The position numbers and the translations under genes were made by a program. A DNA stretch of 64,000 nucleotides from Asterias rubens (taxonomy: Eukaryota): contig NC_047081.1 in assembly GCF_902459465.1 (NCBI RefSeq), forward strand, positions 186,001 to 250,000, written 5' to 3'. Every line of letters begins with the position of its first letter. Positions within the stretch are counted from its first letter, which is position 1. The notes below the pieces were generated by a model that worked only from the letters and a program-made list of their open reading frames with translations, ran no database searches and was not told the origin of the DNA. Positions 30,917-64,000 of this stretch are shown here, in pieces.

Positions 30917-31041
30917 AGCCTTTTCGAAACCACAGCTTCGGCTTTAGGCTCCGTTCGTCTGAAGCCCTGAGCGTAGTAACGTCAAAACACGGCTAGCCTG
31001 AGCCGAATCCATAGCCGAAGCCGTGGTTTCGATAAGGGTCT
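30917..31041. mobile_element. Short palindromic MITE upstream of CYP-2
   Basis: AGCCTTTTCGAAACCACAGCTTCGGCT ... AGCCGAAGCCGTGGTTTCGATAAGGGTCT: imperfect TIR. Confidence 0.6.
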
Positions 31042-31826: not shown

Positions 31827-32255
31827 CAGGGGCGGATCCAGGATCCAGCTAGGGGGTAACCTTGTAAGGGGGTGACTTTGTAAGGGCTAAGGTGGTGACT
31901 TCGTCGACGACTATAAGGGGGTGACTTTGTAAGGGGGTAACTCTGTGAGTGGTGACTTTGTAAAGGGGGTAACTTTGTCAGGGGGTGACTTTGTAGGGGG
32001 TGACTTTGTAAGGGGGTGACTTTGTAAGGGGGGTGACTTTGTAAGGGTGACCACTTGTGGTCCACAATGAAGCAAAGTGTACAAGGAAGTCGTACTCCGG
32101 GTTATTTTACTGTTTTGATAACAAAATACCCAGTATGTAGTTTATTTTGTGTCGTGTCCCCCCCCCCTCCCCCCTTTCTCTCTTTTCTTTTTTCTCTCCC
32201 TCTCACTGACAGAAAGAGGGGGCTGCGCCCCCACGCCCCCCTGGATCCGCGTCTG
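31827..32255. mobile_element. Harbinger-like non-autonomous element carrying a ~16-bp internal tandem repeat
   Basis: CAGGGGCGGATCCAGG ... CCTGGATCCGCGTCTG TIRs; internal (GGGGGTGACTTTGTAA)n at ~31850-32050. Confidence 0.65.
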
Positions 32256-41144: not shown

Positions 41145-41321
41145 TTTTTGTGGATGCTTGGATTCTTCTCTTTCTATATCTAGGTTTCCATCTTGCAATT
41201 ATCGTAAACATCAATCAAAAAGATGATATTCTAACTTATATTCTCTCGTCTTCTGTAAATTGCTTCAAGTGAAATATGAAATGGCTTTCATTCCATTGGA
41301 CTTAAGTCAAATTCGCATCCC

Positions 41322-41590
41322 AAACACAATTTACGGTGATAGTGGTTTTACTGTACTCAAAACAAAACACAATTTACTGTGTGATAGTGGTTTTACTGTA
41401 CTCAAAACAAAACACAATTTACTGTGTGATAGTGGTTTTACTGTACTCAAAACAAAACACAATTTACTGTGTGATAGTGGTTTTACTGTACTCAAAACAA
41501 AACACAATTTACTGTGTGAAACTGGTTTTACTTAACTCAAAACAAAACACAATTTACTGTGTGATAGTGGTTTTACTTAACTCAAAACAA
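41322..41590. repeat. 45-bp minisatellite, ~6 copies, abutting the FABP acceptor
   Basis: GTGATAGTGG recurs every 45 bp from 41336 to 41561 (one variant copy). Confidence 0.95.
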
Positions 41591-41630
41591 TCCTTCCTCT
41601 CTTACAGTTACCTAACTCATCTCAACCAAC

Positions 41631-42654
41631 ATGCCCTGTGACTTGAGCGGAAAGTGGGTGTATGCCAGCGGAGATGGTATGGATGCTCTATTGGACCTTC
41701 TTAAGGTACCGGCTGAGAAGCGTCCCACTGACCCCTCCTCTACCGTAGAGATCACCCAGAGTGGAGATGACTTCACTGTCAAGACAACCGCTGCTGATGG
41801 CAACTGCCGTGAGGCCAAGTTCACAATCGGTGAGTGTAACAATTTATCGTGATTTCCAGATTTATTCTTGTCTTGGGAAAACAAGGAATTGCATAAAGAA
41901 ACTTAATTTAAGTTCATTTAAGTTTACTTCCACCCCCTCGGGCCTCCTTGTTAAACTTCTATTTAGGAGTACCAATACACTACAGTACAATCTTTAAAGG
42001 GCCTTGGCAATCTTTTACGGTCTTTATGAGTTTTGTTATTCTAAAAACAATTTGCAGTGTAACAATTTATTGTTTCAATCAGTTGGCCATGACGTCTCAA
42101 AGACTAAGTATCACCTCAATGCACACAGAGAGATGATTTCCGTAGCAAATCCTACTAAGATGGCATTCCATCAAGCAAAGTTTAAAATCCTACTTTAAAA
42201 TGTTATAATAGTTCTTATGAGAGATCACCTAATATCACAAGGCCACAGGTGAGGGCTGCTTAATTGTCACCAGGGGCACGTTGCTACCTACTCCTTGGGC
42301 TGAAACAGGGTTACCCACTTCCTTCAGATGTTGGCATGGCTATCATCCACAAGAACCTTCCCTGGTAGAGCAGATTGCACTACCTTCACAACAATTAGTA
42401 TTAATGTTACTATTATTCCAATTAATATCTATGATTGCATTTTCTTTTCTTCAGGTGTTGAGTTTTCCGACCCAGACATCAAGGCCCTCCGAGGGGTTGA
42501 GGTTAAAGCCACACCTTCCTGGGAGGGAGATAAGCTCGTCCTCAAAGGGTCTGGTGGAAACGGGACAGCGACCCGTGAGATCGTTGGAGGTCAACTAGTC
42601 ATGAGCTTTGACATTATGGGAACCAAGGCAACAAGATTCTTCAACAAGGCATAA
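41631..42654 (+). CDS. Intracellular lipid-binding protein (FABP/CRABP family), 132 aa, 2 coding exons
   Basis: Exons 41631-41829 and 42455-42654 (399 nt). Motifs LSGKW, VEITQSGDDFTVKT, FTIG|VEF, WEGDKLV, TREIVGGQLV, ATRFFNK. Confidence 0.92.
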
Positions 42655-43367
42655 ACATCATCAACAACTTCAGTCGAACATTTATGATCAGTACAAAATG
42701 AAAATGGTTTTATTCTATTATAAAATCATGTAAAAAATTACACAAGCCCTTTCACTCTATTACTTGTATATCTCATGAAGCTGTATAGCAATTTTGAAAC
42801 GTTGAAATAAATCACACATTTTTGTACATGTATCAATGAATCATGTGTTTTAGTCAAATAATTATTGACTCAGTCGGACGTCTCCCTTTTAACTACTGAC
42901 TAATTATATTTCACATCAAAACTTAGCATTGTCACAACTAGAATTTTGAAAAAAATGAGGGGGGGGGTGCAAACAGGGGCAAGGGCATAGATTTGGGGGC
43001 TTTTCTCCATTGCACTTGGGGGAGGGGGTCTGAAAGGGGGTGCTCTCACCCCCATCCCCAATCCCCACCCCCATCCCCAATGTTGGTTAAGCCACTGCAA
43101 CTTGTTTTAAATACTTGAGTCCTACAACAGTCTTTGTTTAACAGAATGTATTCAATGAGTGACAACTATGGTCATCATAACCACTAATGTTGTAGTCAAG
43201 TTCACGACCTCCAAGGCCAAAGCCAAGTCCAAGTTCTGGGTCTCTGAGGTCAAGACCAATGCCAAGATCAACGCCGACACCACAGCAGTCGATCCAAAGT
43301 CGGCCTTTATACTTGTAACACTTGTTGAGGCAAGCCAAATAACCAAAGCAAGGGCCTGAATGATGTC

Positions 43368-46300
43368 CTAAATAGCAATTTCACCCTGAAGAACAACCGT
43401 AGCTCGTCCAAGTAGATCAACGCGCCCTTCATCCCGTATCCTCATCTCAATATCACCGCCCCTCTTTGAACACTGACGAGCTGTTAAAACACAATCATTG
43501 TACAATCATGACTTGGGTTGTCAGTAGAGGGCGCTCTTGAACAAAAATTTCACCAATTAAGTTGCAGAGTATCAACTTCACACACAAAACATCAGGTAGC
43601 AGTAGTAGACAAATCTGTTCCTATCAACATGGCGAGATCAATTTGATCTCATTGATTGTTTGATACAGAAATGTATCCTTATCAATGACAGTGAGTTCTC
43701 AGTCCTAATCAACTACGGTGAATCTCAAATCTCAATCCTACTCAACCATAAGTTTTTTGTCCTACTCGGCTAAAAATATCAAATCTCAATCCTAATTATC
43801 TGTACTGAGATTCCAAACTAACTCAGATTATGGTGAAAAGCAAATCCTACTCGATGAGTTGATCAGCGGCATCCTAACTTGGTGAGACCCTAATCCTACT
43901 GGGTGTTGGTGAGACCCTAATCCTACTGAGTGTTGGTGAGACCCTAATCCTACTGAGTGTTGGTGAGACCCTAATCCTACTGAGTGTTGGTGAGACCCTA
44001 ATCCTACTGAGTGTTGGTGAGACCCTAATCCTACTGAGTGTTGGTGAGACCCTAATCCTACTGGGTGTTGGTGAGACCCTAATCCTACTGAGTGTTGGTG
44101 AGACCCTAATCCTACTGGGTGTTGGTGAGACCCTAATCCTACTGAGTGTTGGTGAGACCCTAATCCTACTGAGTGTTGGTGAGACCCTAATCCTACCGAG
44201 TGTTGGTGAGACCCTAATCCTACTGAGTGTTGGTGAGACCCTAATCCTACTGAGTGTTGGTGAGACCCTAATCCTACTGGGTGTTGGTGAGACCCTAATC
44301 CTACTGGGTGTTGGTGAGACCCTAATCCTACTGGGTGTTGGTGAGACCCTAATCCTACTGAGTGTTGGTGAGACCCTAATCCTACTGGGTGTTGGTGAGA
44401 CCCTAATCCTACTGAGTGTTGGTGAGACCCTAGACCCTAGTCCCATTTTGTGATAGTGAGATCTTACCCTACACGGCAATCAGTCAGAATTCTACCAAAC
44501 TTAAAGTGAGATCCAAACCCTACGAAACTCAGTGGTGAGTTTTGATCCTACTCAGTATTGTATACAACTAAATGTATCTCAATCATACTCGATGATAATG
44601 AGAACTCAATTCTACTCAGCAATAACAAAATCTGAATCATTTTCAGAGAACAATGTAATCTACGTTTACATTTCACGATGAAAACATTTCTTCATCTCAC
44701 TCATTTGAGATCAACAGTAGCTTACATTTCAATTGTACGCCACTACTACTACCATTTTAAACATTTAGAAAGTATCAAATAAGATCAACATTTGAAATCT
44801 TACCATAAAGTTCTTTCTTGCTCAGTGTCTCTGCCCAGTAACCAGCTAAAACAGTGTGTGCAGAACCTGAACAAAAGATACAGTCAACATCTTTTTAATA
44901 ACGGAATAAAAGAGTAGGTGACGAGGTCTTAAGTCGGCATTTAAAACTGGCAGGGATGTCCGTATGAGAAATGATCGAGCCTTACATATGGTGAGGGTGA
45001 GAGAAGCAAATTATGGTCAAGTTCTTTGTTCAAGGGGATACCATAATGATGACCTCTGTGCACAAGACGGTTCTGTCACAACATTATATTTATACAACAA
45101 GGTTATCTAAACTTTTCCAGTGTCTGGATCAACTAACCTGTAACAGGGTCTTCTGGGATACCATTCCACGGAGAAAAATACCTGGAGATGAAATCATACT
45201 GTCTGTCTGCTGCGCCCACGCCTCCGTTGTCACGGTTACCCTTCAGTGTCACTATAACACCCCGTACGTGAGAAGCATTAGGGGCAGCCATCATGGCTGT
45301 ACAGTCTGGTTTCAGACTCTCCAAAGTGTCTCTGTAGAATAGGATAGAATAGTACATAACTTTGTTTAGACTGGTTGCTCTCTTTTGAAATGAAGGCATT
45401 TTATACCCATCTAGCCTCCCTAAGCAGAATTTGATTTCTATGACTGCTAAGCGACCCCCTTCCAAACCCACAGGCACATTGACATTCCCCTTGTAGCATG
45501 AAAAAACTTCAGTTTATAAGATCATATAGCATACTAATTGCCAACATTTAACGGCAAAAGTAACAATTCTCATTTTAAACACTTACGAATTCTAGTACCT
45601 TGTCTCAGAGTCCGAAAGTCTAAGCAGCAGTTTTTTAGTTGTTTCAGAATAAAAAACTTCTTGGGGTTTATAGTCACCAATGGTTACCTGTAAACAAATT
45701 GAGAAAAGTTGTCATTTTCAAATGTTCAACCACCAGTCCAATTATTAGTAGCACAAATATCCAATAGTATACTTTTGTACGATTCTATTGAACTTGGGGT
45801 TATACTAAACTGATATGTGGATCAGGGGGGGGGGACAATTTAGATTGACCCTAAACTAATTGCTAAGAGAAGTGTGATGTCATAAAATGAAGGTGATACT
45901 GACAACTTGTCCTAAGTGCTTTGTGAATTTTGAGCCAAGGCATCAAAATGGAAGATGAGCTTTTTGTTTATTGAGCAACATTTTAAGTAACTTACTCAAG
46001 GAGTTAGGGTTAAACAAAAGTATAAAAGAAAAATTGGATCAAACAAAATTTCATGATTGATAATTTATTTGAAGGAAACTTACCTGAATTAATTCTGATA
46101 GAGGTGCCTCATCCTAAACAAACCGAGAGAAAATAAAATATATAAATGTTTTTTAGCTCAAACTTTACTATAGGGTCCAACTTTTGCAGGGATTCCATCC
46201 GGTGCAGTTGTGTTTAGTCAGCCGTAGGGCAACAAGGGGCAGAAAAGGATGTTAGTCAAAATTGTTGTGGTTACGCTCTTTACTTGCAAATTTATGGAAA

Positions 46301-47272
46301 AGTATCTGAGAAAGTCTGAATAAATACCTCTTTTGATGGTTTATTTAGAGGGAAATCCAAGCCGATGGACTTCCCTTCTCGACTCGCTATCAGCTCCCCA
46401 CTCTTGGATTGAAACCTGATGGAATCGCACCTGTTACCAACAACGTAAAACAAGGCTGCTGCAGATGCTAGGGTCGCATGGCCACAAAGATTGACCTCAT
46501 TGGTGGGAGTGAACCAACGAATCTTCACCCGACTTACTGTATGAAAGAAAAAGGATGTTAATAGGCAACAGTATCCCATTACGTCAAATAAATGCACATC
46601 TAGTAACACGCCCCAGTACGCAGAGCATTTACACACATGTTTTGGGTTTTTTGTTTATGCAAGTCGCCAGACACACAAAGCCTGAAGGCCACTTCAAGGT
46701 GTGGGCTACAATTCAAGTATTTTTCCGGGGGTAGTTGCCACCTACTCCTGTGGCTGAAAAAGGGTTAACCCCTTTACAGTCCATACGGATGTAGGCTAGG
46801 GTATCATCAATTAGAAGCCTGGCTGGTAGAGCAGAAAGCACTACCTCCCCAACTTTACGAAAGTTACATAAATGATCGACTCTTGTATTTACCATTCTGA
46901 AATGATTCTTCCGGTTCGACCGACTGTAAATAAGCCGTCTCTGATAGATTCATCTCAGCTGCAATTTTCATCTTAGTCTCATCTGGAATATCCTAAGTAG
47001 ACAAAAATCAATAAAAAATGTAAAGACAAAAATAAAATTGCTCCAGTAGTCACAGACAAGTTTATGTGTTCTAGATTAATCGATGTACATCATGAGACAT
47101 GACTCCACATGACGAGTCAGGTCAGAGTGAATTAACAAAAGCTCATGATTTAGCCTTATACTTACAGGCCAACTTGCTTAGGACTACCTAGTACTCCAAA
47201 TTTCCTACATTTTCCCAACAGCAGCAAGTCTCACTCATGCCCCCCCCCCCCAAAAAAAAAAAAAAAAATTAA

Positions 47273-47315
<43 letters not shown>

Positions 47316-47741
47316 ATCATTATTCATTGTCAATTCACTTTCTCTTTCAGTCTTTGCTTTTTGGGAAGTACACCATTTTGATTTCATTCCTCTGTTGTGT
47401 TTACTACCTAAAACTTGTTAATATAATTAAAGTTAAGCTCACAATTTATAAGTCGTGACTTGCTCTATGTATGTAGGATGATAAAGTTTATGCTCGGTGC
47501 TTTGAAAGTTTGATTTAGTCTTGGACTATATCACTATTTTTTCTAAACGCCAACGTTTAGATTCTTTAGTAAAAAGAAAAAACATGACCTCAAACAAACA
47601 CTGCTCCCTTACCTCATTTAGCAGGCAGATAGCAGCTGGGTTTCCAGCAAAAGGTATATCGGTGAATGCATCCACTGTCACCATTGGTAACCGTCCTTCT
47701 TGTCCAGAAACAGCAAAATTTCCAAACTTTTCGGCTGCCAT
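43368..47741 (-). CDS. PBLD: Phenazine biosynthesis-like (PhzF/DAP-epimerase fold) protein, 8 exons, 308 aa
   Basis: Exons 47741-47613, 46992-46893, 46536-46328, 46113-46084, 45687-45599, 45331-45138, 44866-44804, 43480-43368 (927 nt). Motifs VDAFT..FAGNPAA, EMNLSETA, RWFTPTNEVNLCGHAT, EDPVTGSAH, RGG. Confidence 0.94.
43879..44432. repeat. 27-bp minisatellite, ~20.5 copies, PBLD intron 7
   Basis: (TTGGTGAGACCCTAATCCTACTG[A/G]GTG)n; explains the SRIRVSPTL ORF. Confidence 0.97.
47268..47317. repeat. (TAAA)n microsatellite preceded by poly-C/poly-A
   Basis: Read directly from the sequence. Confidence 0.95.
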
Positions 47742-49474: not shown

Positions 49475-52400
49475 CTAGCTCCCAGTACTTGGGAATATCT
49501 GTGTTTTCCTGGCACATTTCCACATTGCATCCAAAATGCGTGAGAGGCCCAGCTCCTTAGACTTGTCCAGTCCTCTCTGTATTCGGTTTTTGACAACTCC
49601 TACGAATTCCTTGTTGCTTAACTTCCCATCATCTAGGAAATAAAAACAAAAAAGTGAAATAAATTGTGTTAGTTCAGAGATTTTGTATATATTGTGTGTT
49701 CATATACACTCTTTCTGAGATACTTAGTCAGGGCTGGTTCTAATCAAACACCTCTTTCAAGTGAGAGTGTTTCTCAACAATGCTACCAAACAATTGTTGT
49801 TTTTAATCAATCAGAAAAGATAGATAGATTCAAGTGGGTGCCTTGTTATGACGTACCAAGAGGAAGGCCTCTGATTGGTCATAAATAAATGTGCAGTTAT
49901 CGTTGGTTAAAAGTAAACGTCAAGGTAATGTATTTCTGAAACGAGACCCTACTCACCATTTTCATCAAAGAGGGTAAATACAATGTCTAGTACCCTGTCT
50001 GTCAGCTGTACATGTGCAACCATGTTCCCAACATGCTTCAAGGTTTCTGTTCAAAGATGGATGGAAGTACCAATAAATGAAAACAGTCTGAATATCGAGA
50101 GCTTGAAGGACAAAAGCTTTGGGTTTTTTAAAGGTTTATTACTTTACTTTTGTATGCAAGTCGCCAGACACACAAGGCCTGAAGGCCATTTCAAGGAGTG
50201 GGCTACAATCAACTATTTTTCCAGGGGCTGTGCCACCTACTCCTGGGGCTGAAACAGGTTTACCCCCTTTACAGTCCATGCGTATGTAGGCTTGGGTATC
50301 ATCCATCGGAAGCCTGGCTGGTAGAGCAGAAAGCACTACCTCCCCAATTTTACAAAGCAATCAACGTTAAATGTCTTGCTGAAGGACACAAGTGTCACAA
50401 CCGGGACTTGAACCCACACTCTGTAGATCAAACACCAGAGCTTGAATCTGGTGCTCTTAGCCATGACACGTCATAAAAGCACAGAAACAGACCATAATTC
50501 CACAGAGTGAGTAGCTTACCTTGATCAATAGCTGCACCAGCCACGTGGTAAAATGATAACGCTGTATCTACATCATGTATGCTACTCAGAAAACGCTGAA
50601 GGTCCATAAACTCCTGCAGTGTGATTCCCTACAGTCAATAATACAAAGATGGTAAATGTGTAAATACCACCTTGCATAAAATACCCACTACTACACTGTT
50701 TGACATTTGGGACAATCTCTTGAATTGGCGCGTGATGACATGCATTGGGTCAATAAAGCCTATAAAAGGGCTTTACTAAAAAAGAAGTCCTAAACAATTA
50801 TGAAATACCGAGTTCCACAAGGCACTCTGCATTTCTGTACAACCATTACCATATCATTGTGTTGATGAAATCCTATCCTATCTTGCATGAGGCATTCCTT
50901 GCAAAAATGTCAGATCTCAACAAATTTTTAGTAAGGCACAATTTTTGGCACTTTCCTGTGTCCATTTTGGGCTTCATAAAGATTTGTTTACAACCCCTTT
51001 AAGCAAATCTGAGAAACGTAGAGGTCAAAGTTGAAAAGTAAAGATACTTACATGTCCCTTTGCATCTTCGGCAAACTTCTTCTTGACCCTCTTCCTCATC
51101 CTTAATTTTCTTGGTTTTGGAATCTGATCGGCGTAGACCAGGAGGAAGTTAGCCAGGTTCAGCTCAGTGATTTTACCATTGATCGGCTCATAGCGTTCAA
51201 ACTGTAAAAGAGAGAAAATGCAGTATGAAGTCCTTTTCTGCTTCCAGGGCCCAATTTCATCAAGCTGTTTAGCAGAAAATTCTACTTAGCAAATTTCTAT
51301 GCTGAGCATAAACTGAGTGGGGCACCAATTTCAACAATGTTAAGTTTATGGAACTTTGGTTGGTAATCGATTTCTGTGCTTACATTTTCTGTGCTTCACC
51401 AGTTGTTATGCTTACAGGCTTCATGAAGTTGGGCCCTGATGTGAGCAAACATCACACCAATCCTGAACGATCTACTTTGGCTACCAACGAAGGACAGAAT
51501 TATTTTCAAGATCCTTGCGTATGTCTATCACTCATCAAAATGCACTGCATCACAATATCTCTCAGAAAGACTCCAACCCTATCTTTTTTACCGCCAGTCT
51601 TTGAGATTTTAACCCCTGACCAAAACATCATGAGGTGAACGAGCGTTTACATCTGCTGCCCCATCATTAGCTTGTCGGATCATGTTTAACTTTCTCTTAG
51701 CTCTGTTCAAAACTTCTCTCAAGACTCATTATAAATGCTCGTTATAATTCTTTCTAGTGAAATTGTTAAATTTTGGCACCACTTTGAAGAAAAGGCACAG
51801 GTTGACCATGGTTTCTACCTCCATGGGTTGACCATGGTTTCTACCTCCACGGGTTGACCATGGTTTCTACCTCCACGGGTTGACCATGGTTTCTACCTCC
51901 ATGGGTTGACCATGGTTTCTACCTCCACGGGTTGACCATGGTTTCTACCTCCACGGGTTGACCATGGTTTCTACCTCCACGGGTTGACCATGGTTTCTAC
52001 CTCCACGGGTTGACCATGGTTTCTACCTCCACGGGTTGACCATGGTTTCTACCTCCACGGGTTGACCTACCTCCATTTTCAGAATCTCTTCCTTCAGATG
52101 TTTGTGAAATTTTCCAAAGGATTCAAAAGTCAACTTCTTGTCCAGGTTTGGGCCAAAGAAGAAAGTGTCGAGAGAGCTGTTGAAGGGTTTGTTCAGAGTG
52201 TTTCCAGTGGTCTTACGATCACGATGTTTCTTGCCTGTTGCTGTTTGAGCTCTGATGACATCCGTCACCTACAAGTGAGAACATTGGGGAAATATGAAGT
52301 TGTTAAATAGAGTGAATGGCTGCCTCTATTGATCTCAGCACTGAGGTGTGTATGCCTGTAATTTCCCACAGGACACGGTGGCAATGACCTCTGTTGCCCC

Positions 52401-55400
52401 TGGTATTGGCCTTGGTGCCCCAATGGACCATTCTTCAAGAACTATCAATTGAAAACTTAACTGTACACACAAGTGCTAAAGACCATGCGGGTGTCTTTAC
52501 AAGACGCTGTAGTTTCATTGATAACAATAATATTTCATTGCTTAAAATGTTTCAGTGGAAATAATCACACAGGAAGTCCCAGTGACTGTTGCAAGAATCC
52601 CAGTGGCTGTTGGTTGAAACAACCTCCATAAATACTTCATGAAGTGTATTTCTAAAATCATGTTATGAAGATTTCCTCACCTGTTGGAATTCATCATAAG
52701 AAACATCGCCATCCCCGTTGATGTCAAAGAGACGAAAAGCTATCTCAAAATGTCTCTCGGGAGCTGTCAAATAAAACATACAAATGGTAAAAAAAAAAAA
52801 ACTGGAAAACAATCTAACGTTTTTTACACACTATATCAAACATTATGTAAAATTACAAGTTTTAGATATTCTGATGTGATTTGTAGCAAGATCCGTAGCC
52901 GAGCTGTCTAGTTCATTGGACTTGAGTTCCAGCAGCCAAGTTGTAAATGTCTTAGGCCTGGTCACATTTCACGCAATTTGCGAAAAGGCAGCAAATTTTG
53001 TGCACAACAGAAAACAATACTGATTGTTGGCATCAATTGTAAAATATAACCACTGCTTTTAAAACAAACTTACTTGACAAGACTGTGATGAGAAACATGT
53101 AGTCAGCAAAGGAGATCAATCCGCACTCGCCCAACATCCCAAATATACTATCCTCTCCAAACTTCTGGTTCTTCAAGTTTAGTTTCTACACAACACAGAA
53201 AAGAATTTAAAGAAAATCAGTTAGTTCTTTCTTCAGTTACAAAGAACTAACTGTGTCAGTACTTCTCTGGAAATATAAGTGGAAAGAAATGCTTATAGAT
53301 GCAGCAGTGTATAGATGCAGCAGTGTGTAGATGCAGCAGTGTATAGATTCAGCAGTGTGTAGATGCAGCAGTGTATAGATGCAGCAGTGTGTAGATGCAG
53401 CAGTGTGTAGATGCAGCAGTGTGTAGATGCAGCAGTGTATAGATGCAGCAGTGTATAGATGCAGCAGTGTGTAGATGCAGCAGTGTATAGATGCAGCAGT
53501 GTGTAGATGCAGCAGTGTATAGATGCAGCAGTGTATAGATGCAGCAGTGTGTAGATGCAGCAGTGTGTAGATGCAGCAGTGTATAGATGCAGCAGTGTAT
53601 AGATGCAGCAGTGTATAGATTCAGCAGTGTATAGATGCAGCAGTGTGTAGATGCAGCAGTGTATAGATGCAGCAGTGTATAGATGCAGCAGTGTGTAGAT
53701 GCAGCAGTGTATAGATGCAGCAGTGTATAGATGCAGCAGTGTGTAGATGCAGCAGTGTGTAGATGCAGCAGTGTGTAGATGCAGCAGTGTATAGATGCAG
53801 CAGTGTGTAGATGCAGCAGTGTGTAGATGCAGCAGTGTGTAGATTCAGCAGTGTATAGATGCAGCAGTGTGTAGATGCAGCAGTGTATAGATGCAGCAGT
53901 GTATAGATGCAGCAGTGTATAGATGCAGCAGTGTATAGATGCAGCAGTGTATAGATGCAGCAGTGTGTAGATGCAGCAGTGTATAGATGCAGCAGTGTGT
54001 AGATGCAGCAGTGTGTAGATGCAGCAGTGTGTAGATGCAGCAGTGTGTAGATGCAGCAGTGTGTAGATGCAGCAGTGTATAGATGCAGCAGTGTATAGAT
54101 GCAGCAGTGTATAGATGCAGCAGTGTATAGATTCAGCAGTGTGTAGATGCAGCAGTGTATAGATGCAGCAGTGTATAGATGCAGCAGTGTGTAGATGCAG
54201 CAGTGTGTAGATGCAGCAGTGTATAGATTCAGCAGTGTGTAGATGCAGCAGTGTATAGATGCAGCAGTGTGTAGATGCAGCAGTGTATAGATGCAGCAGT
54301 GTATAGATGCAGCAGTGTATAGATGCAGCAGTGTATAGATGCAGCAGTGTATAGATGCAGCAGTGTGTAGATGCAGCATTGTGTAGATGCAGCAGTGTAT
54401 AGATGCAGCAGTGTATAGATGCAGCAGTGTGTAGATGCAGCAGTGTATAGATGCAGCAGTGTATAGATGCAGCAGTGTATAGATGCAGCAGTGTGTAGAT
54501 GCAGCAGTGTATAGATGCAGCAGTGTGTAGATGCAGCAGTGTGTAGATGCAGCAGTGTATAGATGCAGCAGTGTATAGATGCAGCAGTGTGTAGATGCAG
54601 CAGTGTATAGATGCAGCAGTGTATAGATGCAGCAGTGTGTAGATGCAGCAGTGTATAGATGCAGCAGTGTATAGATGCAGCAGTGTGTAGATGCAGCAGT
54701 GTATAGATGCAGCAGTGTATAGATGCAGCAGTGTGTAGATGCAGCAGTGTATAGATTCAGCAGTGTGTAGATGCAGCAGTGTATAGATGCAGCAGTGTGT
54801 AGATGCAGCAGTGTGTAGATGCAGCAGTGTGTAGATGCAGCAGTGTGTAGATGCAGCAGTGTATAGATGCAGCAGTGTGTAGATGCAGCAGTGTGTAGAT
54901 GCAGCAGTGTATAGATGCAGCAGTGTGTAGATGCAGCAGTGTATAGATTCAGCAGTGTGTAGATGCAGCAGTGTATAGATGCAGCAGTGTGTAGATGCAG
55001 CAGTGTGTAGATGCAGCATTGTATAGATGCAGCAGTGTGTAGATGCAGCAGTGTATAGATGCAGCAGTGTGTAGATGCAGCAGTGTATAGATGCAGCAGT
55101 GTATAGATGCAGCAGTGTATAGATGCAGCAGTGTGTAGATGCAGCAGTGTATAGATGCAGCAGTGTATAGATGCAGCAGTGTGTAGATGCAGCAGTGTAT
55201 AGATGCAGCAGTGTATAGATGCAGCAGTGTGTAGATGCAGCAGTGTATAGATGCAGCATTGTATAGATGCAGCAGTGTATAGATGCAGCAGTGTATAGAT
55301 GCAGCAGTGTGTAGATGCAGCAGTGTATAGATGCAGCAGTGTATAGATGCAGCAGTGTATAGATGCAGCAGTGTGTAGATGCAGCAGTGTATAGATGCAG

Positions 55401-58400
55401 CAGTGTATAGATGCAGCAGTGTATAGATGCAGCAGTGTATAGATGCAGCAGTGTATAGATGCAGCAGTGTATAGATGCAGCAGTGTGTAGATGCAGCAGT
55501 GTATAGATGCAGCAGTGTGTAGATGCAGCATTGTGTAGATGCAGCATTGTGTAGATGCAGCAGTGTATAGATGCAGCAGTGTATAGATGCAGCAGTGTGT
55601 AGATGCAGCAGTGTATAGATGCAGCAGTGTATAGATTCAGCAGTGTGTAGATGCAGCAGTGTATAGATGCAGCAGTGTGTAGATGCAGCAGTGTGTAGAT
55701 GCAGCAGTGTATAGATGCAGCAGTGTATAGATGCAGCAGTGTATAGATGCAGCAGTGTGTAGATGCAGCAGTGTGTAGATGCAGCAGTGTGTAGATGCAG
55801 CAGTGTATAGATGCAGCAGTGTATAGATGCAGCAGTGTGTAGATGCAGCAGTGTATAGATGCAGCAGTGTATAGATTCAGCAGTGTGTAGATGCAGCAGT
55901 GTATAGATGCAGCAGTGTGTAGATGCAGCAGTGTGTAGATGCAGCAGTGTGTAGATGCAGCAGTGTATAGATGCAGCAGTGTATAAATGCAGCAGTGTAT
56001 AGATGCAGCAGTGTGTAGATGCAGCAGTGTGTAGATGCAGCAGTGTATAGATGCAGCAGTGTGTAGATGCAGCATTGTGTAGATGCAGCAGTGTATAGAT
56101 GCAGCAGTGTATAGATGCATCAGTGTGTAGATGCAGCAGTGTGTAGATGCAGCAGTGTATAGATGCAGCAGTGTGTAGATGCAGCAGTGTGTAGATGCAG
56201 CAGTGTGTAGATGCAGCAGTGTATAGATGCAGCAGTGTGTAGATGCAGCAGTGTGTAGATGCAGCAGTGTATAGATGCAGCAGTGTGTAGATGCAGCATT
56301 GTGTAGATGCAGCAGTGTATAGATGCAGCAGTGTATAGATGCATCAGTGTGTAGATGCAGCAGTGTGTAGATGCAGCAGTGTATAGATGCAGCAGTGTGT
56401 AGATGCAGCAGTGTGTAGATGCAGCAGTGTGTAGATGCAGCAGTGTATAGATGCAGCAGTGTGTAGATGCAGCAGTGTGTAGATGCAGCAGTGTATAGAT
56501 GCAGCAGTGTGTAGATGCAGCAGTGTATAGATGCAGCATTGTGTAGATGCAGCAGTGTATAGATGCAGCAGTGTGTAGATGCAGCAGTGTGTAGATGCAG
56601 CAGTGTGTAGATGCAGCAGTGTGTAGATGCAGCAGTGTGTAGATGCAGCAGTGTGTAGATGCAGCAGTGTATAGATGCAGCAGTGTGTAGATGCAGCATT
56701 GTGTAGATGCAGCAGTGTATAGATGCATCAGTGTGTAGATGCAGCAGTGTATAGATGCAGCATTGTGTAGATGCAGCAGTGTATAGATGCAGCAGTGTGT
56801 AGATGCAGCAGTGTGTAGATGCAGCAGTGTGTAGATGCAGCAGTGTGTAGATGCAGCAGTGTATAGATGCAGCAGTGTATAGATGCAGCAGTGTATAGAT
56901 GCAGCAGTGTGTAGATGCAGCAGTGTATAGATGCAGCAGTGTATAGATGCAGCAGTGTGTAGATGCAGCATTGTGTAGATGCAGCAGTGTATAGATGCAG
57001 CAGTGTATAGATGCATCAGTGTGTAGATGCAGCAGTGTATAGATGCAGCATTGTGTAGATGCAGCAGTGTATAGATGCAGCAGTGTGTAGATGCAGCAGT
57101 GTGTAGATGCAGCAGTGTGTAGATGCAGCAGTGTGTAGATGCAGCAGTGTGTAGATGCAGCAGTGTGTAGATGCAGCAGTGTATAGATGCAGCAGTGTGT
57201 AGATGCAGCATTGTGTAGATGCAGCAGTGTATAGATGCATCAGTGTGTAGATGCAGCAGTGTATAGATGCAGCATTGTGTAGATGCAGCAGTGTATAGAT
57301 GCAGCAGTGTGTAGATGCAGCAGTGTGTAGATGCAGCAGTGTGTAGATGCAGCAGTGTGTAGATGCAGCAGTGTATAGATGCAGCAGTGTGTAGATGCAG
57401 CAGTGTATAGATGCAGCAGTGTATAGATGCAGCAGTGTATAGATGCAGCAGTGTATAGATGCAGCAGTGTATAGATGCAGCAGTGTGTAGATGCAGCAGT
57501 GTATAGATGCAGCAGTGTATAGATGCAGCAGTGTGTAGATGCAGCAGTGTGTAGATGCAGCAGTGTATAGATGCAGCAGTGTGTAGATGCAGCAGTGTAT
57601 AGATGCAGCAGTGTATAGATGCAGCAGTGTGTAGATGCAGCAGTGTATAGATGCAGCAGTGTGTAGATGCAGCAGTGTGTAGATGCAGCAGTGTATAGAT
57701 GCAGCAGTGTGTAGATGCAGCAGTGTGTAGATGCAGCAGTGTATAGATGCAGCAGTGTGTAGATGCAGCAGTGTATAGATGCAGCAGTGTGTAGATGCAG
57801 CAGTGTATAGATGCAGCAGTGTATAGATGCAGCAGTGTATAGATGCAGCAGTGTGTAGATGCAGCAGTGTATAGATGCAGCAGTGTATAGATGCAGCAGT
57901 GTATAGATGCAGCAGTGTATAGATGCAGCAGTGTATAGATGCAGCAGTGTATAGATGCAGCAGTGTATAGATGCAGCAGTGTATAGATGCAGCATTGTGT
58001 AGATGCAGCAGTGTATAGATGCAGCAGTGTGTAGATGCAGCAGTGTGTAGATGCAGCAGTGTATAGATGCAGCAGTGTGTAGATGCAGCAGTGTATAGAT
58101 TCAGCAGTGTGTAGATGCAGCAGTGTATAGATGCAGCAGTGTGTAGATGCAGCAGTGTATAGATGCAGCAGTGTATAGATGCAGCAGTGTATAGATGCAG
58201 CAGTGTATAGATGCATCAGTGTGTAGATGCAGCAGTGTATAGATGCAGCATTGTGTAGATGCAGCAGTGTATAGATGCAGCAGTGTATAGATGCAGCAGT
58301 GTATAGATGCAGCAGTGTATAGATGCAGCAGTGTATAGATGCAGCAGTGTATAGATGCATCAGTGTGTAGATGCAGCAGTGTATAGATGCAGCATTGTGT

Positions 58401-61278
58401 AGATGCAGCAGTGTATAGATGCAGCAGTGTGTAGATGCAGCAGTGTGTAGATGCAGCAGTGTGTAGATGCAGCAGTGTGTAGATGCAGCAGTGTATAGAT
58501 GCAGCAGTGTATAGATGCAGCAGTGTATAGATGCAGCAGTGTATAGATGCAGCAGTGTATAGATGCAGCAGTGTGTAGATGCAGCAGTGTGTAGATGCAG
58601 CAGTGTATAGATGCAGCAGTGTGTAGATGCAGCAGTGTGTAGATGCAGCAGTGTATAGATGCAGCAGTGTATAGATGCAGCAGTGTATAGATGCAGCAGT
58701 GTGTAGATGCAGCAGTGTATAGATGCAGCAGTGTGTAGATGCAGCAGTGTGTAGATGCAGCAGTGTATAGATGCAGCAGTGTATAGATTCAGCATTGTGT
58801 AGATGCAGCAGTGTATAGATGCAGCAGTGTATAGATGCAGCAGTGTATAGATGCAGCAGTGTGTAGATGCAGCAGTGTATAGATGCAGCAGTGTGTAGAT
58901 GCAGCAGTGTGTAGATGCAGCAGTGTATAGATGCAGCAGTGTGTAGATGCAGCAGTGTGTAGATGCAGCAGTGTATAGATGCAGCAGTGTATAGATGCAG
59001 CAGTGTGTAGATGCAGCAGTGTGTAGATGCAGCAGTGTTTAGATGCAGCAGTGTGTAGATGCAGCAGTGTATAGATGCAGCAGTGTGTAGATGCAGCAGT
59101 GTGTAGATGCAGCAGTGTATAGATGCAGCAGTGTGTAGATGCAGCAGTGTATAGATGCAGCAGTGTATAGATGCAGCAGTGTATAGATGCAGCAGTGTGT
59201 AGATGCAGCAGTGTATAGATGCAGCAGTGTGTAGATGCAGCAGTGTGTAGATGCAGCAGTGTATAGATGCAGCAGTGTATAGATGCATCAGTGTGTAGAT
59301 GCAGCAGTGTATAGATGCAGCAGTGTGTAGATGCAGCAGTGTGTAGATGCAGCAGTGTATAGATGCAGCAGTGTATAGATGCATCAGTGTGTAGATGCAG
59401 CAGTGTGTAGATGCAGCATTGTGTAGATGCAGCAGTGTATAGATGCAGCAGTGTATAGATGCATCAGTGTGTAGATGCAGCAGTGTATAGATGCAGCAGT
59501 GTATAGATGCAGCAGTGTATAGATGCAGCAGTGTGTAGATGCAGCAGTGTATAGATGCAGCAGTGTATAGATGCAGCAGTGTATAGATGCAGCAGTGTAT
59601 AGATGCAGCAGTGTATAGATGCAGCAGTGTATAGATGCAGCAGTGTATAGATGCAGCAGTGTATAGATGCAGCAGTGTATAGATGCAGCAGTGTTTAGAT
59701 GCAGCAGTGTGTAGATGCAGCAGTGTATAGATGCAGCAGTGTGTAGATGCAGCAGTGTGTAGATGCAGCAGTGTGTAGATGCAGCAGTGTGTAGATGCAG
59801 CAGTGTATAGATGCAGCAGTGTATAGATGCAGCAGTGTATAGATGCAGCAGTGCATAGATGCATTCACCACAAAACATCATACTACTGGCTGGCTTAGTG
59901 CATCTATCATTCAAAACCACAGTAGATGATATTGAATGGTCAGAAATATGAAATCATATTGCATTAATAGATTATCCCTAGTGAGATCAGATACAGTACT
60001 AAGAATCTTTTACAAACTGAACTTTTACATTCACCAAACAACAATTTCATGGTCTGAAATAAAATTAGAATTCTAGAACTTTCCACATACCTTTGCTTCT
60101 ACTCTCTTGAACTGATCTAGTCCCAGACCTTTTAACAAAAAGAGAACAAAATGGTTATGAGTGAAAGTTATTAGCATTCTTGGCAACAAGCCCCATAAGT
60201 TCAAGCCTAGTAGTGACTGAAGTTTGCAAGAGTTAATCCTTGATTAAGAATTATAAAGCAGTCTCACCTTCTGGTTGTTTCTCGTCTGGAGTGATGCTTC
60301 GTATGAAATCTTCTGCCGTCATAAAGATTTCTGAAATGCCATCATCCGTGAAAACCTTCAACGTTGCAAAGTAACGGAATATCTTGTCTGGAGTTGAGTA
60401 GGCACGAATGCGATTTTCATACTCGATAATCTTCATGACATAAAAAAATAAAAAAATATATTATTGTTCTCTGCTTTACAGATGTGACACATTATTCATA
60501 TTTCTTTTACATCTTTCTGGTAAAAGCGAGATTAAGCTACTTAAAGTTAGGGTTTACCTTTCTATCTCTGAATCCAGGTCCTTTCTTTTTCTTCTCAACT
60601 TCTTCTCCTTCCTCAACACTCTGGTCCTCTGCTGCCATAGCAACATCTTCTTCTGATTTCTGCACCTCTTGGGCATGTATCGTCTGTGCCCTGAGACCAA
60701 AATAGTATTCATCATCAGTACATTAAATAAAATGTTTTAAACCTCAAAGAAAACAGAGATCAATGGAACAGCATTCACAGTATTTGTAAGTATTGCTGAT
60801 TATCTGTCATCTATTCCAAGTTTTTTCCGGGCAAGTCTAAATCTTTCTTGGCAAATCTTTTTTAGAGCAAGTCTTTAGTCCATTTTCGCCAAGTCTTACA
60901 CTCGGGTTACCAACTCTCTGCTCTGTTTTTTTTTTTGGTATAAAAGAATTCTCATCCAGCATGTCCAGTTTTATCGGACGCAACCCCACTCATCACCACC
61001 CCAACCTCGACCCCGCCCCCCTTTTACTGGTATCCTCCCTGACCCTTGAGTCCTTAACTTTCACGAAATCAGTCACAATCATTAGGCACGGCCTAAAGTG
61101 CTAACCTTTCCCACATGATCGCTGCGGTAACCACACCAGCCCCGCCCCCAAAGAGGGACAAGATGTGTTTGATACGAGATGGAGACTGGGTGACGACACT
61201 AGGGGGCGCACTTGACAGGCTCCTCCATCGCTGCTGAACGAGGACTTGAAGGGTCCGTCGTGCTACAGATCTGAACAT
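49475..61278 (-). CDS. MICU1: Mitochondrial calcium uptake protein 1, 11 coding exons, 468 aa
   Basis: Exons 61278-61106, 60690-60558, 60430-60268, 60128-60091, 53185-53074, 52763-52681, 52268-52071, 51201-51052, 50628-50520, 50046-49957, 49632-49475 (1407 nt). Motifs [51 protein letters not shown]-hands [14 protein letters not shown] and [14 protein letters not shown]. Confidence 0.96.
50150..50470 (-). mobile_element. tRNA-derived SINE; partial copies at ~46640-46862, ~42270-42390, ~4945-5020, ~14830-14865
   Basis: Minus-strand head with B-box GGTTCAAGTCC, then GTGTCCTTCAGCAAGACA. The 3' body (AAGTCGCCAGACACACAAGGCCTGAAGGCC...GGCTGGTAGAGCAGA) is shared among copies. Confidence 0.8.
51245..51438. 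mobile_element. MITE with CAGGGCCCAA TIR; related decayed copy at ~33640-33846
   Basis: CAGGGCCCAATTTCAT ... ATGAAGTTGGGCCCTG. Confidence 0.65.
51801..52066. repeat. 26-bp minisatellite, 10 copies, abutting the MICU1 exon 7 donor
   Basis: (GTTGACCATGGTTTCTACCTCCA[C/T]GG)10 from 51801 to 52060. Confidence 0.97.
53294..59863. repeat. 16-bp minisatellite, ~410 copies (6.57 kb), MICU1 coding intron 4
   Basis: (TAGATGCAGCAGTGT[A/G])n. The 16-nt phase is conserved at variant positions checked from 53349 to 59464. Confidence 0.99.
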
Positions 61279-61789
61279 CCTGTTTGGAAACCGTCACTTC
61301 ACCTAATCCATCAATAAAGATTATACGATTGAAACAACATTTAATGATGAGCTAAACAAAATAAAAGTAAATTTTACAACTATATTTTCGGTTACAAAAT
61401 ATCACCATTATAAATAAGCAAGTAAACCATCTACGCACATGAAATACCCTCAGAATACACAATGAAAAACCATCAAACCTACATTGTGTATAACAAACAT
61501 TTCAATTCCGTTGTTAGAGAGTTAAAAGGGTGAATTGTACCTGATCAAAACATCACCACAACCCGTCCAAAGTGTGCATTTCTCTTCTCTGTACTTTGTT
61601 AAATGGTACCCTTTTCAAAATTAAGTTTACTACACATAGTAAATAGGTAATTTTTGTTATTGAATTGGGGTACCAGTCTAAATGGGCAGGGTGTTATGTC
61701 TGGTTCATCTGCCTCTAATTCAGCCACTGTGCATTCTATGCGCTCGAGGTATAGCGGAAGAACCAGACTACAACCAACTTGACAGCAAA

Positions 61790-62680
61790 ATGGCGTTCAG
61801 ATCCATCTTCCGTTTGGACCGCTGCAAACAACAAGCATTTTTTGCTTTTTCTGCTCTCTCAAAAGCTGGCAAAAGGGTAAGAAATAATATTTCTTTAGTC
61901 GGAGATATTATTTACTAGAAATTCTGGTTAATAGAACTGTTCTTTGCAACTAAAAATAAATATATCTGTATCACAAACACACACGAACGACGGATAACGA
62001 TATAAAAAACTTAAAAATGGGAAAGCCGGTGGCCCAGTCATATTGTTTGAAACAGCTAATTCTATTTTCTCAATTATTATTTCTCGTTCTTTTCAGGGAA
62101 AAGTTGCCGTATGGCGCCACCACTTTTTCATTCGATATGAAATAATATAGTAGTATCTAATTTACCTCAATGAATATCCCTTTTTGTTTTTGTAAAATTG
62201 AGTGAAAAAGTGGTGGCGCCATACGGAAAGTTATTCCATGTTCAGTTAAAATTTTCATTTCAATTATAAAAACATTAATATTAGACTTAAATTAAAAATT
62301 AAAAACATACATTTGTTTAAATTAGATAGAATACTATACTACACATTTTTTACTCATCTCTGTAGTCTTCAAAACTGCAATTTACAATGTTCTGTCTTAT
62401 AATTATCATTTGTTGAGCGAGGGACAGGGACACACCCTCTAAATGGGCGGGTGGGCGGGGCTTAGTGGATCCACTCATGAGGTTTGTTACACCATGGAAC
62501 TATTACTTAGCTCCATGGTTACACACTATACAAACCTCATAGTTCTAGGAGTATAGTGGTCCAATCTTGTCTCTGATGCATTTCTTGATTTTTCTTTAAT
62601 TTCTCAGGATGCTCATCGATTCCTACCTGGGAGTTTAAGACTTTGTGCAGCGGCTTACTGTTCAGCACCAAGCGATAATG
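61790..62680 (+). CDS. MCU: First two exons of a mitochondrial-targeted protein, most likely the calcium uniporter pore subunit (rest beyond window)
   Basis: Exon 61790-61876 (AAAATGGCG start; MAFRSIFRLDRCKQQAFFAFSALSKAGKR, donor AGG|GTAAG) and exon 62608-62680 (DAHRFLPGSLRLCAAAYCSAPSDN, phase-1 donor). The basic/hydroxyl-rich presequence, the YCS..PSD motif (recalled from vertebrate MCU exon 2) and the position divergent from MICU1 support the call. The MCU core domain is not in the window. Confidence 0.7.
62107..62226. mobile_element. Short MITE; half copy at ~8576-8652
   Basis: CCGTATGGCGCCACCACTTTTTCA ... TGAAAAAGTGGTGGCGCCATACGG: perfect 24-bp TIR. Confidence 0.8.
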
Positions 62681-63256
62681 GTGAGATACAGTCTGCATTA
62701 TGTAATGTGAAGCAATAGAAGCAATTGCCCCCATGCCCTGCCCCCAATTGCCCTCCATGCCCCCTGCCCTGGTCATTGCCTCAATGCCCCTTGTCATTGC
62801 CTCAATGCCCCTTGTCATTGCCTTTAGATTGTCCTTGAAGGATCTCATTATAGAGGTGCCTGCCCTACAATTGTATACCAAAGGATATACTGTCCTTTTA
62901 TGTAGTTTAGCTCACTAACAACCACTCTTTAATCAACCACTCTGTAATAGCCTTGAATCAGCATTCATAAAAACCTAAGACAGTTCATCCATTCTGATTG
63001 GTCGCATCCACGAGGGGTTGTTTGAACGGATGATATAACAAAAGTAAAAAGCTTGCACCTGTGCTTATAAGACAGTATCTTCATTCCTATTGGTCGAGAG
63101 CAACGGCTGGAACAGTTGTGCCACATCACGCGATACCATTTTATAGCTGGAGGGGTGTTGTGTTGAAATAAAACATTGAACAATACAGTTTTTGCATTAT
63201 TTTACTTTTTGACCAACATTTTTTGATGTTTTTTGACCGAAAAGGTATTTTTGAAT

Positions 63257-63420
63257 GGGAATCAAAGTGTGTTGAATCGATTTTCAACTAGTGGTTTAAA
63301 CCCGCCGAGGCCTGGTCCTTGATAATTTACCTCGACTTCATCTCGGTAAAATTATCAAGCACCAGGCCTCGGCGGGTTTAAACCACTAGTTGAAAACCTC
63401 TTCACCACGCATTGATTCCC
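63257..63420. repeat. Long hairpin/palindromic repeat
   Basis: TTTTCAACTAGTGGTTTAAACCCGCCGAGGCCTGGT ... ACCAGGCCTCGGCGGGTTTAAACCACTAGTTGAAAA is perfect for 36 bp, with imperfect extension both ways. Confidence 0.9.
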
Positions 63421-64000
63421 TTATTAGCAGTCCTACCCTTTGTTGTTTTCCAAAAGCAAACGGTAGAACTATGCATTTCTTTGCGTACTGTACACCGTGT
63501 GCACGTACATGTAGTGTTGTGGTGAATTAATATTTATTACACTGGTCATTAAACTTAATCACCCGTTACGTTCATGGACAGAAACTTTTTGTGGAAGTGA
63601 CTGCATTGGATGCAAATTGCTCATCATAATTTGAAATAACAAAAATTATAATACAGTGCTCGAAATTTACACTAAATGAGTATTGAGTAGATCTCGTAAG
63701 TCCAACATCCACAAATTTGCATTTATGATCGTGCCCAACTCATATATTAACCAGTAGATACTTACTGACAGTGTGTACAAGTCTCCTCTTAAATTATTCA
63801 AAATTGTGCAAATAATATGAATCCAGTTTGCTGGGTCGTGGTTAAATACATCACATGTTGCCAAGGTCTCAAAAAAGTCCTCTTGAAAACTCAAATTTAA
63901 AATTCTAATGAATCAAGAGTTGTTGGGTCTACACAATAGACGCATCCTAGGCACTCTGGCTTCCCTGTCGCTACACCTGCATATTACATAAATGTGTCAA

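What the first reader, a model, noticed from the sequence alone, without database searches (positions are those of the whole stretch)
61106..62680. MICU1 and probable MCU are head-to-head, ~0.5 kb apart, in an invertebrate
Seen: MICU1 ATG at 61278 (-) and a second ATG at 61790 (+), 512 bp apart, with GCGGAAG (ETS-like, ~61754) and AAAATGGCG (YY1-like) between or at them. The plus-strand exons encode a mitochondrial presequence ending AAAYCSAPSDN at a phase-1 intron. Established (recalled): vertebrate MCU and MICU1 are divergent neighbours with a shared promoter region, and human MCU exon 2 ends GAVYCSTVVPSD at a phase-1 junction. Inference: the pore/gatekeeper bidirectional unit predates vertebrates and may enforce stoichiometric co-expression. 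The ORF track misses this gene.
Basis: partly seen in the sequence, partly recalled or inferred. Interest (0 to 1): 0.75.

Follow-up and report, generated by a model that had tools for sequence, protein, structure and literature searches.

The report
Starfish MCU and MICU1 head-to-head
In this starfish the genes for the mitochondrial calcium channel (MCU) and its calcium-sensing gatekeeper (MICU1) start back to back about 0.5 kb apart; a fish shows the same head-to-head layout, so the pairing is old, but both genes are already annotated and any shared control is untested.

Summary
The observation and its main reading hold. The window is identical over the 24,526 bases compared to Asterias rubens LR699111.1. 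MICU1 (468 aa) runs on the minus strand from ATG 61278. On the plus strand, ATG 61790 opens two exons (61790-61876 and 62608-680). Their GT..AG junction is present in RNA contigs of all four runs, on contigs of 3.5-3.7 kb. The public annotation starts a 334-aa product with a Pfam MCU domain at exactly 61790.

An alternative MICU1 leader exon (61541-61611) leaves at most about 175 bp between the ends of the two transcripts. That gap holds a 20-bp block conserved in Patiria at the same distance from the MCU ATG.

The divergent pair is also found in A. amurensis (511 bp), Patiria (1,002 bp) and a pipefish (5,051 bp). It was not seen within 10 kb in a sea cucumber. In a nemertean and a bivalve, PCNA sits upstream of MICU1 instead.

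Co-regulation is inferred, not shown. I found no paper describing the arrangement.

The parts
49475..61278 (-). MICU1 coding range (468 aa, A. rubens XP_033644311.1 = P0464), at least 11 coding exons. The first four are 61105-61278, 60558-60689, 60268-60430 and about 60091-60128.
   Evidence: The annotated CDS range maps to 49475-61278. P0464 matches the window exons, at 100% on the HSPs that stay within an exon. RNA joints are 60689/61105, 60430/60558 and 60128/60268. Homology to MICU1 proteins from many animals.
61279..61302 (-). MICU1 5' UTR directly upstream of the ATG. Position 61302 is the acceptor for the upstream leader exon. Some contigs instead run on unspliced to 61308.
   Evidence: Joint 61300->61539 (true cut 2 places further right), ends CT..AC, which is GT..AG on the minus strand, in runs X1 and X4. 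Contig ends at 61281-61308. Sequence.
61541..61611 (-). Alternative non-coding MICU1 leader exon 1a. The coordinates are its minimum extent.
   Evidence: At the joint, 40 letters (X1) and 71 letters (X4) lie on that side. Depth in bins 61474-61607 and 61608-61741 agrees.
61612..61784 (.). Core divergent promoter interval between the outermost transcript ends seen. It is at most about 173 bp, AT-rich, and not a CpG island.
   Evidence: Contig ends at 61611 (MICU1) and 61785 (MCU). The 511-nt spacer has GC 0.35 and CpG o/e 0.58.
61673..61692 (.). Conserved block CCAGTCTAAATGGGCAGGGT, a candidate shared promoter element.
   Evidence: Identical in A. amurensis and near-identical in Patiria. It lies 110 and 114 nt upstream of the MCU ATG in the two lineages, while the rest of the spacer does not align convincingly. 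The 13-nt exact core was reached by 4 of 300 shuffles.
61754..61760 (+).
   Evidence: Present and conserved in A. amurensis. The aligned Patiria sequence lacks the GGAA core. It occurs 4 times in the window on both strands. A regulatory role is not supported.
61787..61795 (+). AAAATGGCG, a YY1-like site that overlaps the MCU start codon.
   Evidence: Present in Asterias and Patiria (GAAAATGGCGTTC). Six of its nine bases are fixed by the conserved Met-Ala coding, so conservation proves little.
61785..61876 (+). MCU exon 1: a 5' UTR of at least 5 nt, then ATG 61790 and 29 codons (MAFRSIFRLDRCKQQAFFAFSALSKAGKR).
   Evidence: Translation. A 3,700-nt RNA contig ends at 61785. The annotated CDS starts at 61790. 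Exon 1 is 100% conserved in A. amurensis and 60% in Patiria.
61877..62607 (+). MCU intron 1 (731 nt, GT..AG, phase 0). It holds a palindromic MITE-like element at 62096-62237.
   Evidence: The joint is present in all 4 runs. Inverted repeat.
62608..62680 (+). MCU exon 2 (73 nt), the end of the presequence, ...AAAYCSAPSDN plus the first base of a Gly codon.
   Evidence: Translation. RNA joint. It joins exon 3 in frame as G|GT. Conserved in A. amurensis and Patiria.
62681..64000 (+). First 1.3 kb of MCU intron 2, which runs to 67399 beyond the window. Exon 3 is 67400-67570 (L002:3709-3879, minus strand). Exon 4 is 69859-69963 (L002:1316-1420, minus strand).
   Evidence: L002 equals the window over 24,526 of 24,526 bases and extends to window coordinate 71278. 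Exon boundaries. PDB matches to the MCU N-terminal domain.

Best explanation
Shown: the two genes are MICU1 (minus strand) and MCU (plus strand) of Asterias rubens. They are transcribed divergently, with start codons 512 bp apart. The transcript ends seen in RNA contigs lie no more than about 175 bp apart, which is the layout of a compact bidirectional promoter. The same head-to-head pair exists in two other starfish and in a teleost fish.

Inferred: the pair was already present in the common ancestor of echinoderms and chordates (about 85% likely). One short shared control region, including the conserved block 110 nt upstream of the MCU ATG, drives basal co-expression of the pore and its gatekeeper (about 55% likely). 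That would make it hard for a cell to produce the channel without the subunit that keeps it shut at resting calcium.

The confidence given is for the shown part (gene identities, arrangement and its presence in the other species).
For: Identity of the minus-strand gene:
- Its exons match MICU1 proteins.
- They match the annotated A. rubens MICU1, P0464, at 100% on the HSPs that stay within an exon.

Identity of the plus-strand gene:
- The annotated CDS begins at 61790, with a 334-aa product that hits PF04678:MCU.
- Exon 3 matches human MCU 74-130 at E = 3e-18, and exon 4 matches 131-164 at E about 1e-4 to 1e-3.
- The phase-1 junction gives a continuous frame...PSDN-G-VQCEYQNGLPV....

Transcription:
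- The junction 61876/62608 is present in contigs of 4 of 4 runs, on contigs of 3.5-3.7 kb.
- MICU1 contigs of 2.2-2.8 kb are present in the same runs.
- A MICU1 leader exon lies at 61541-61611 (all).

Conservation of the arrangement:
- A. amurensis, 511 bp.
- Patiria miniata, 1,002 bp.
- The pipefish Stigmatopora nigra, 5,051 bp.

Candidate element: a 20-bp block conserved between Asterias and Patiria at the same distance from the MCU ATG.

Rationale for coupling: MCU and MICU1 co-occur across eukaryotes, and MICU1 protects cells from MCU-dependent metal toxicity (bioRxiv 10.1101/371419).
Against: - No functional test of a shared promoter was possible. TSSs are inferred from contig ends, not from CAGE.
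- Contig depths of the two genes do not track each other across the four runs. MICU1/MCU depth is about 0.8, 3.4, 1.5 and 1.0, and this is a poor measure of expression.
- The spacer is AT-rich with no CpG island.
- The conserved block rests on one inter-order comparison, and 4 of 300 shuffles reached its 13-nt core.
- The tight pairing is not universal. No gene is called within 10 kb upstream of MICU1 in Apostichopus, and no MCU N-terminal-domain match is found there. PCNA is the upstream neighbour in Tubulanus and Mactra.
- Mouse tissues set different MICU1:MCU protein ratios (PMC5760244), so fixed stoichiometry is not what vertebrates do.
Confidence: 0.9

Rival explanations
1. The genes are MCU and MICU1, but the adjacency has no regulatory meaning. 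It is inherited microsynteny that has simply not yet been broken. Each gene has its own core promoter, and expression is set independently.
For: The pair is absent within 10 kb in a sea cucumber, a nemertean and a bivalve. The spacing varies about ten-fold, from 511 to 5,051 bp. Contig depth ratios vary between runs. Mouse tissues have different MICU1:MCU ratios (PMC5760244).
Against: Head-to-head orientation is retained between echinoderms and a teleost. The transcript ends are at most about 175 bp apart, which leaves little room for two independent promoters. A conserved block lies inside that interval at a fixed distance from the MCU ATG.
Confidence: 0.3
2. The head-to-head arrangement arose independently in starfish and in vertebrates, by convergence driven by the advantage of co-regulation. 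It was not inherited from a common ancestor.
For: It was not seen in the one holothurian and the two spiralians examined. No sea urchin, hemichordate, amphioxus, tunicate or cnidarian could be examined.
Against: It requires the same two genes to land next to each other in the same orientation twice. Within starfish, the flanking PBLD and FABP genes also keep their order between A. rubens and A. amurensis, showing a stable neighbourhood.
Confidence: 0.1
3. The plus-strand exons are not MCU. They would be a chance ORF, a non-coding transcript, or the start of another mitochondrial protein gene.
For: The 54 residues encoded in the window have no significant match to any solved MCU chain.
Against: The annotated product starting at this ATG has the MCU Pfam domain. 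The in-frame downstream exons match the human MCU N-terminal domain. The junction lies on long RNA contigs. The same exon chain is found in A. amurensis and Patiria.
Confidence: 0.01

Closest known systems
Vertebrate MCU-MICU1 neighbourhood (human 10q22.1; tested here in the pipefish Stigmatopora nigra)
   Same: The same two genes are immediate neighbours and are transcribed divergently. MICU1 maps to 10q22.1 (PMC7158096). That human MCU is its divergent neighbour tens of kb away is my recollection and was not tested here.
   Different: The starfish spacer is 0.5-1 kb, against about 5 kb in a compact fish genome. The starfish presequence is split over two exons, whereas human exon 1 encodes the whole targeting sequence (PMC13458766).
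Conserved bidirectional gene pairs of functional partners (for example COL4A1/COL4A2 and histone H2A/H2B; from general knowledge)
   Same: Two subunits of one complex are transcribed divergently from a spacer under 1 kb, and the arrangement is conserved across phyla.
   Different: Shared promoter activity has been shown experimentally for those pairs and not for this one. The spacer here is AT-rich and not a CpG island.
LIS1-METTL16 head-to-head pair reported earlier in this scan for the same genome (s1-150255)
   Same: A human head-to-head arrangement is found compressed to about 0.4-0.5 kb in A. rubens, with a short conserved non-coding block in the spacer.
   Different: Those two genes are not subunits of one complex, and that spacer was described as CpG-rich.

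Membership tests
MCU (mitochondrial calcium uniporter pore subunit, Pfam PF04678) | MCU domain (coiled coils plus two transmembrane helices) detected by the Pfam model | tested here: met
   The gene whose CDS starts at window 61790 has a 334-aa product with an unmarked (E <= 1e-5) PF04678:MCU hit in the precomputed table. The same holds in A. amurensis (334 aa) and Patiria (337 aa). I did not see the C-terminal sequence myself.
MCU (mitochondrial calcium uniporter pore subunit, Pfam PF04678) | Metazoan N-terminal domain homologous to human MCU residues about 74-165 | tested here: met
   Exon 3 matches human MCU 74-130 at E = 3.3e-18. Exon 4 matches 131-164 at E = 1.7e-4 to 1.2e-3. All significant hits are MCU chains.
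MCU (mitochondrial calcium uniporter pore subunit, Pfam PF04678) | Pore motif WDxxEPxTY between the two transmembrane helices | not testable with these tools
MCU (mitochondrial calcium uniporter pore subunit, Pfam PF04678) | N-terminal mitochondrial targeting presequence | tested here: inconclusive
   The first 40 residues hold 9 Arg/Lys (plus one His) and 2 acidic residues, which fits a presequence. No predictor was run, and there is no sequence similarity to other MCU presequences.
MICU1 (EF-hand gatekeeper of the uniporter) | Full-length homology to MICU1 with its EF-hand domains | tested here: met
   532 database representatives match exon 3 alone. Eight to ten exons align to MICU1 proteins of vertebrates, molluscs and insects. 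The window encodes P0464, annotated as 'calcium uptake protein 1, mitochondrial-like [Asterias rubens]', with EF-hand Pfam hits.
Bidirectional-promoter gene pair | Divergent orientation with less than 1 kb between transcription starts | tested here: met
   The ATGs are 512 bp apart. The outermost contig ends are 61611 (MICU1 leader exon) and 61785 (MCU). These are contig ends, not mapped TSSs.
Bidirectional-promoter gene pair | One regulatory region drives both genes (co-regulation) | not testable with these tools
   This needs reporter assays or expression atlases. The only hints are a conserved 20-bp block and the presence of both mRNAs in all four runs.
Bidirectional-promoter gene pair | Arrangement conserved across lineages | tested here: inconclusive
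   Present in Asterias rubens, A. amurensis, Patiria miniata and Stigmatopora nigra. Not within 10 kb in Apostichopus japonicus, Tubulanus polymorphus or Mactra antiquata. Key outgroups were not sampled.

The most novel reading that the evidence does not exclude
The MCU-MICU1 head-to-head unit is an ancient co-regulatory module, at least as old as deuterostomes and possibly older. Selection holds it together because a pore made without its gatekeeper is harmful. The conserved block about 110 nt upstream of the MCU ATG is its shared control element. Lineages that broke the pair (holothurians, spiralians, and the mammalian expansion to tens of kb) gained the freedom to set tissue-specific MICU1:MCU ratios.
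Probability: 0.25. Interest if true: 0.6.

Novelty: new member of a known kind. Interest (0 to 1): 0.45.

Why it matters

A pairing of the two genes kept from starfish to fish would add a genomic layer to their known co-occurrence. The compact starfish version, with transcript ends at most about 175 bp apart and one conserved block in a 0.5-kb spacer, gives a small and tractable piece of DNA for testing whether pore and gatekeeper are co-transcribed. Patiria embryos can be injected with reporters.

Seven full-text searches found no paper describing the arrangement. The facts themselves can, however, be read from existing annotation.

Tried and rejected
- A PDB sequence search with the 54 residues encoded in the window gave no MCU hit. 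The recalled 'YCS..PSD' likeness cannot identify the gene by itself.
- A scan of JGI metagenome contigs for exon 2 found nothing.
- A look-up of the exon-3 ORF found only two ENA metagenome contigs under 1 kb, without DNA.
- A protein search with a turtle MICU1 representative returned only vertebrates.
- A profile of a bivalve-like scaffold plus five window exons returned only protostomes. A local simulation explained why. A profile with all ten exon fragments then found the Asterias proteins.
- I considered padding the two MCU exons with a satellite-ORF scaffold to pass the length filter. I dropped this because the alignment scattered the exons.
- Look-ups of Lingula, Pecten, Lineus and Rhincodon MICU1 failed because only the longest isoform of a gene is on record.
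- The pipefish locus holds only MCU exon 1, so the recalled vertebrate phase-1 junction after '...PSD' could not be checked.
- Rfam found no RNA family in 60000-64000.
- The ETS-like GCGGAAG is rejected as evidence. It is not enriched and not conserved in Patiria.
Full report
**1. What is at the coordinates**

- On the minus strand, an ATG at 61278 opens [11 protein letters not shown]....
- On the plus strand, an ATG at 61790 opens a 29-codon exon that ends at 61876 before GTAAGA.
- After a TTTCTCAG acceptor, a 73-nt exon (62608-62680) reads DAHRFLPGSLRLCAAAYCSAPSDN plus one base, followed by GTGAGA.
- GCGGAAG is at 61754 and AAAATGGCG at 61787.
- The two ATGs are 512 bp apart, with 511 nt between them.

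**2. The minus-strand gene is MICU1**
- The exon at 60268-60430 alone matches 532 database representatives, 312 of them at E <= 1e-10.
- Full-length MICU1 proteins of vertebrates, molluscs and arthropods align to eight to ten exons between 49.5 kb and 61.3 kb on the minus strand.
- A profile built from a scaffold plus ten window exon translations (A1) recovered the Asterias amurensis MICU1, P0422. Its 90% cluster also holds the Asterias rubens protein P0464, XP_033644311.1.
- P0464 matches the window exons, at 100% on the HSPs that stay within an exon.
- Its genomic locus L002 (A. rubens LR699111.1) is identical to the window over all 24,526 overlapping bases. The window is therefore A. rubens, as earlier notes of this scan had said.

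**3. The plus-strand gene is transcribed and spliced as proposed**

Logan contigs of four runs were laid on 60000-64000.
- All four carry the joint 61876/62608 (GT..AG).
- In run X1 that contig is 3,700 nt long and ends at 61785. In X4 it is 3,522 nt long and ends at 61795.
- The same runs carry MICU1 contigs of 2.2-2.8 kb with joints 60430/60558 and 60689/61105.
- Two runs add a joint from 61302 to 61541. This defines a non-coding MICU1 leader exon of at least 71 nt (61541-61611).
- The outermost transcript ends seen are therefore 61611 and 61785, no more than about 175 bp apart. These are contig ends, not mapped transcription starts.

**4. The plus-strand gene is MCU**

The 54 residues inside the window cannot show this. 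A PDB search with them finds nothing. Three independent lines do show it.
- In the public gene table, the neighbour of MICU1 has a CDS that starts at L002:9489, which is window 61790. Its 334-aa product hits Pfam PF04678:MCU.
- L002 extends 7.3 kb beyond the window. An exon at window coordinates 67400-67570 reads VQCEYQNGLPVLLVPLPSRRERCQFTLKPVTETVGDFINHVKAEDGGVDRAGIYNE. It matches human MCU residues 74-130 at E = 3.3e-18, and eleven MCU chains are the only significant hits. A further exon at 69859-69963 matches residues 131-164 at E about 1e-4 to 1e-3.
This gives ...AAAYCSAPSDN-G-VQCEYQNGLP....

The same four-exon chain is found in A. amurensis and Patiria miniata. The pore motif lies in exons that I could not fetch.

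**5. How widespread the arrangement is**

Present, as divergent immediate neighbours:

| Species | Spacer between the ATGs |
|---|---|
| A. rubens | 511 bp |
| A. amurensis | 511 bp |
| Patiria miniata (a different starfish order) | 1,002 bp |
| Pipefish Stigmatopora nigra | 5,051 bp |

The pipefish confirms by tool that a vertebrate has the divergent pair.

Not seen within 10 kb:
- The sea cucumber Apostichopus japonicus has no called gene upstream of MICU1, and there is no match there to the starfish MCU exons.
- In the nemertean Tubulanus polymorphus and the bivalve Mactra antiquata, the upstream gene is PCNA.

The simplest reading is that the pair existed in the echinoderm-chordate ancestor. 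Whether it is older is open. No sea urchin, hemichordate, amphioxus, tunicate or cnidarian could be sampled, and four further look-ups failed because only the longest isoform of a gene is on record.

**6. The spacer**
- It is AT-rich (GC 0.35) with CpG o/e 0.58, so it is not a CpG island.
- Between Asterias and Patiria it aligns poorly, except for one block, CCAGTCTAAATGGGCAGGGT (61673-61692). The block lies 110 nt upstream of the MCU ATG in Asterias and 114 nt upstream in Patiria, while its distance to the MICU1 ATG differs (about 400 and 890 nt).
- The block sits inside the 175-bp interval between the transcript ends. Its 13-nt exact core was reached by 4 of 300 shuffles, so it is suggestive and not proven.
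- AAAATGGCG is shared by Asterias and Patiria, but most of it is fixed by the conserved Met-Ala codons.
- No Rfam family lies in 60000-64000.

**7. How it most likely works**

Shown: two subunits of one channel complex are transcribed divergently from a spacer under 1 kb, and the arrangement is conserved between starfish orders and present in a fish.

Inferred: a shared compact promoter gives both genes a common basal on/off state. The rationale from the literature is that MCU and MICU1 co-occur across eukaryotes and that MICU1 protects cells from MCU-dependent metal toxicity (bioRxiv 10.1101/371419).

- The depths of the two contigs do not track each other across the four runs, although this is a weak measure.
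- Mouse tissues deliberately differ in MICU1:MCU ratio (PMC5760244).

**8. Novelty**

Both genes are already annotated in the public A. rubens record, so the statement that the ORF track misses the gene only reflects the limits of an ORF list. Conserved bidirectional pairs of functional partners are a known kind of arrangement. Seven full-text searches, and text look-ups of four uniporter papers for terms such as chromosome, locus, promoter or adjacent, found no description of the MCU-MICU1 pair as such a unit. The scan had reported a similar compressed human-like pair, LIS1-METTL16, in the same genome. I therefore rate this a correct, modestly interesting new member of a known kind.

Noticed in passing
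window 53294-59863: A 6.6-kb satellite of a 16-nt unit (TATAGATGCAGCAGTG, about 410 copies, 95% matches) with strong GC skew fills MICU1 intron 4. It is absent from the orthologous A. amurensis locus, where the MICU1 coding range is 5.6 kb instead of 11.8 kb. It creates spurious ORFs of up to 1,116 aa on the minus strand.
   Followed up: partly
window 62096-62237 and 63257-63420: Two palindromic MITE-like elements lie in MCU introns 1 and 2 (arms of 50 nt at 80% and 72 nt at 90% complementarity). Their word depth in RNA contigs runs into the thousands to tens of thousands, so they belong to abundant transcribed repeat families.
   Followed up: partly
window 62441-62455: CTCTAAATGGGCGGG in MCU intron 1 resembles the conserved promoter block CAGTCTAAATGGGCAGGG at 61673-61692. 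A. amurensis has a similar copy at the matching place (L001, about 8427).
   Followed up: no
window 41631-47741; L001 and L002: Downstream of MICU1 lie a PhzF/PBLD-like gene (CDS 43368-47741, minus strand) and a fatty-acid-binding protein (Lipocalin_7) gene (41631-42654, plus strand). The order is the same in A. amurensis.
   Followed up: partly
L005 (Tubulanus polymorphus) 6049-8921; L006 (Mactra antiquata) 2357-6286: In both spiralians examined, the gene immediately upstream of MICU1 is PCNA. It is in tandem orientation in the nemertean and divergent in the bivalve. This may be a conserved spiralian neighbourhood.
   Followed up: no
window 43874-44479 and 41260-41640: Two further minisatellites give repetitive pseudo-ORFs (RVSPTLSRI... 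and a repeat of about 16 aa).
   Followed up: no
L007 (Stigmatopora nigra) 26823-34260: In the pipefish, MICU1 is followed by an unnamed 1,108-aa gene, a Ribosomal_S6 gene and a saposin (PSAP-like) gene.
   Followed up: no
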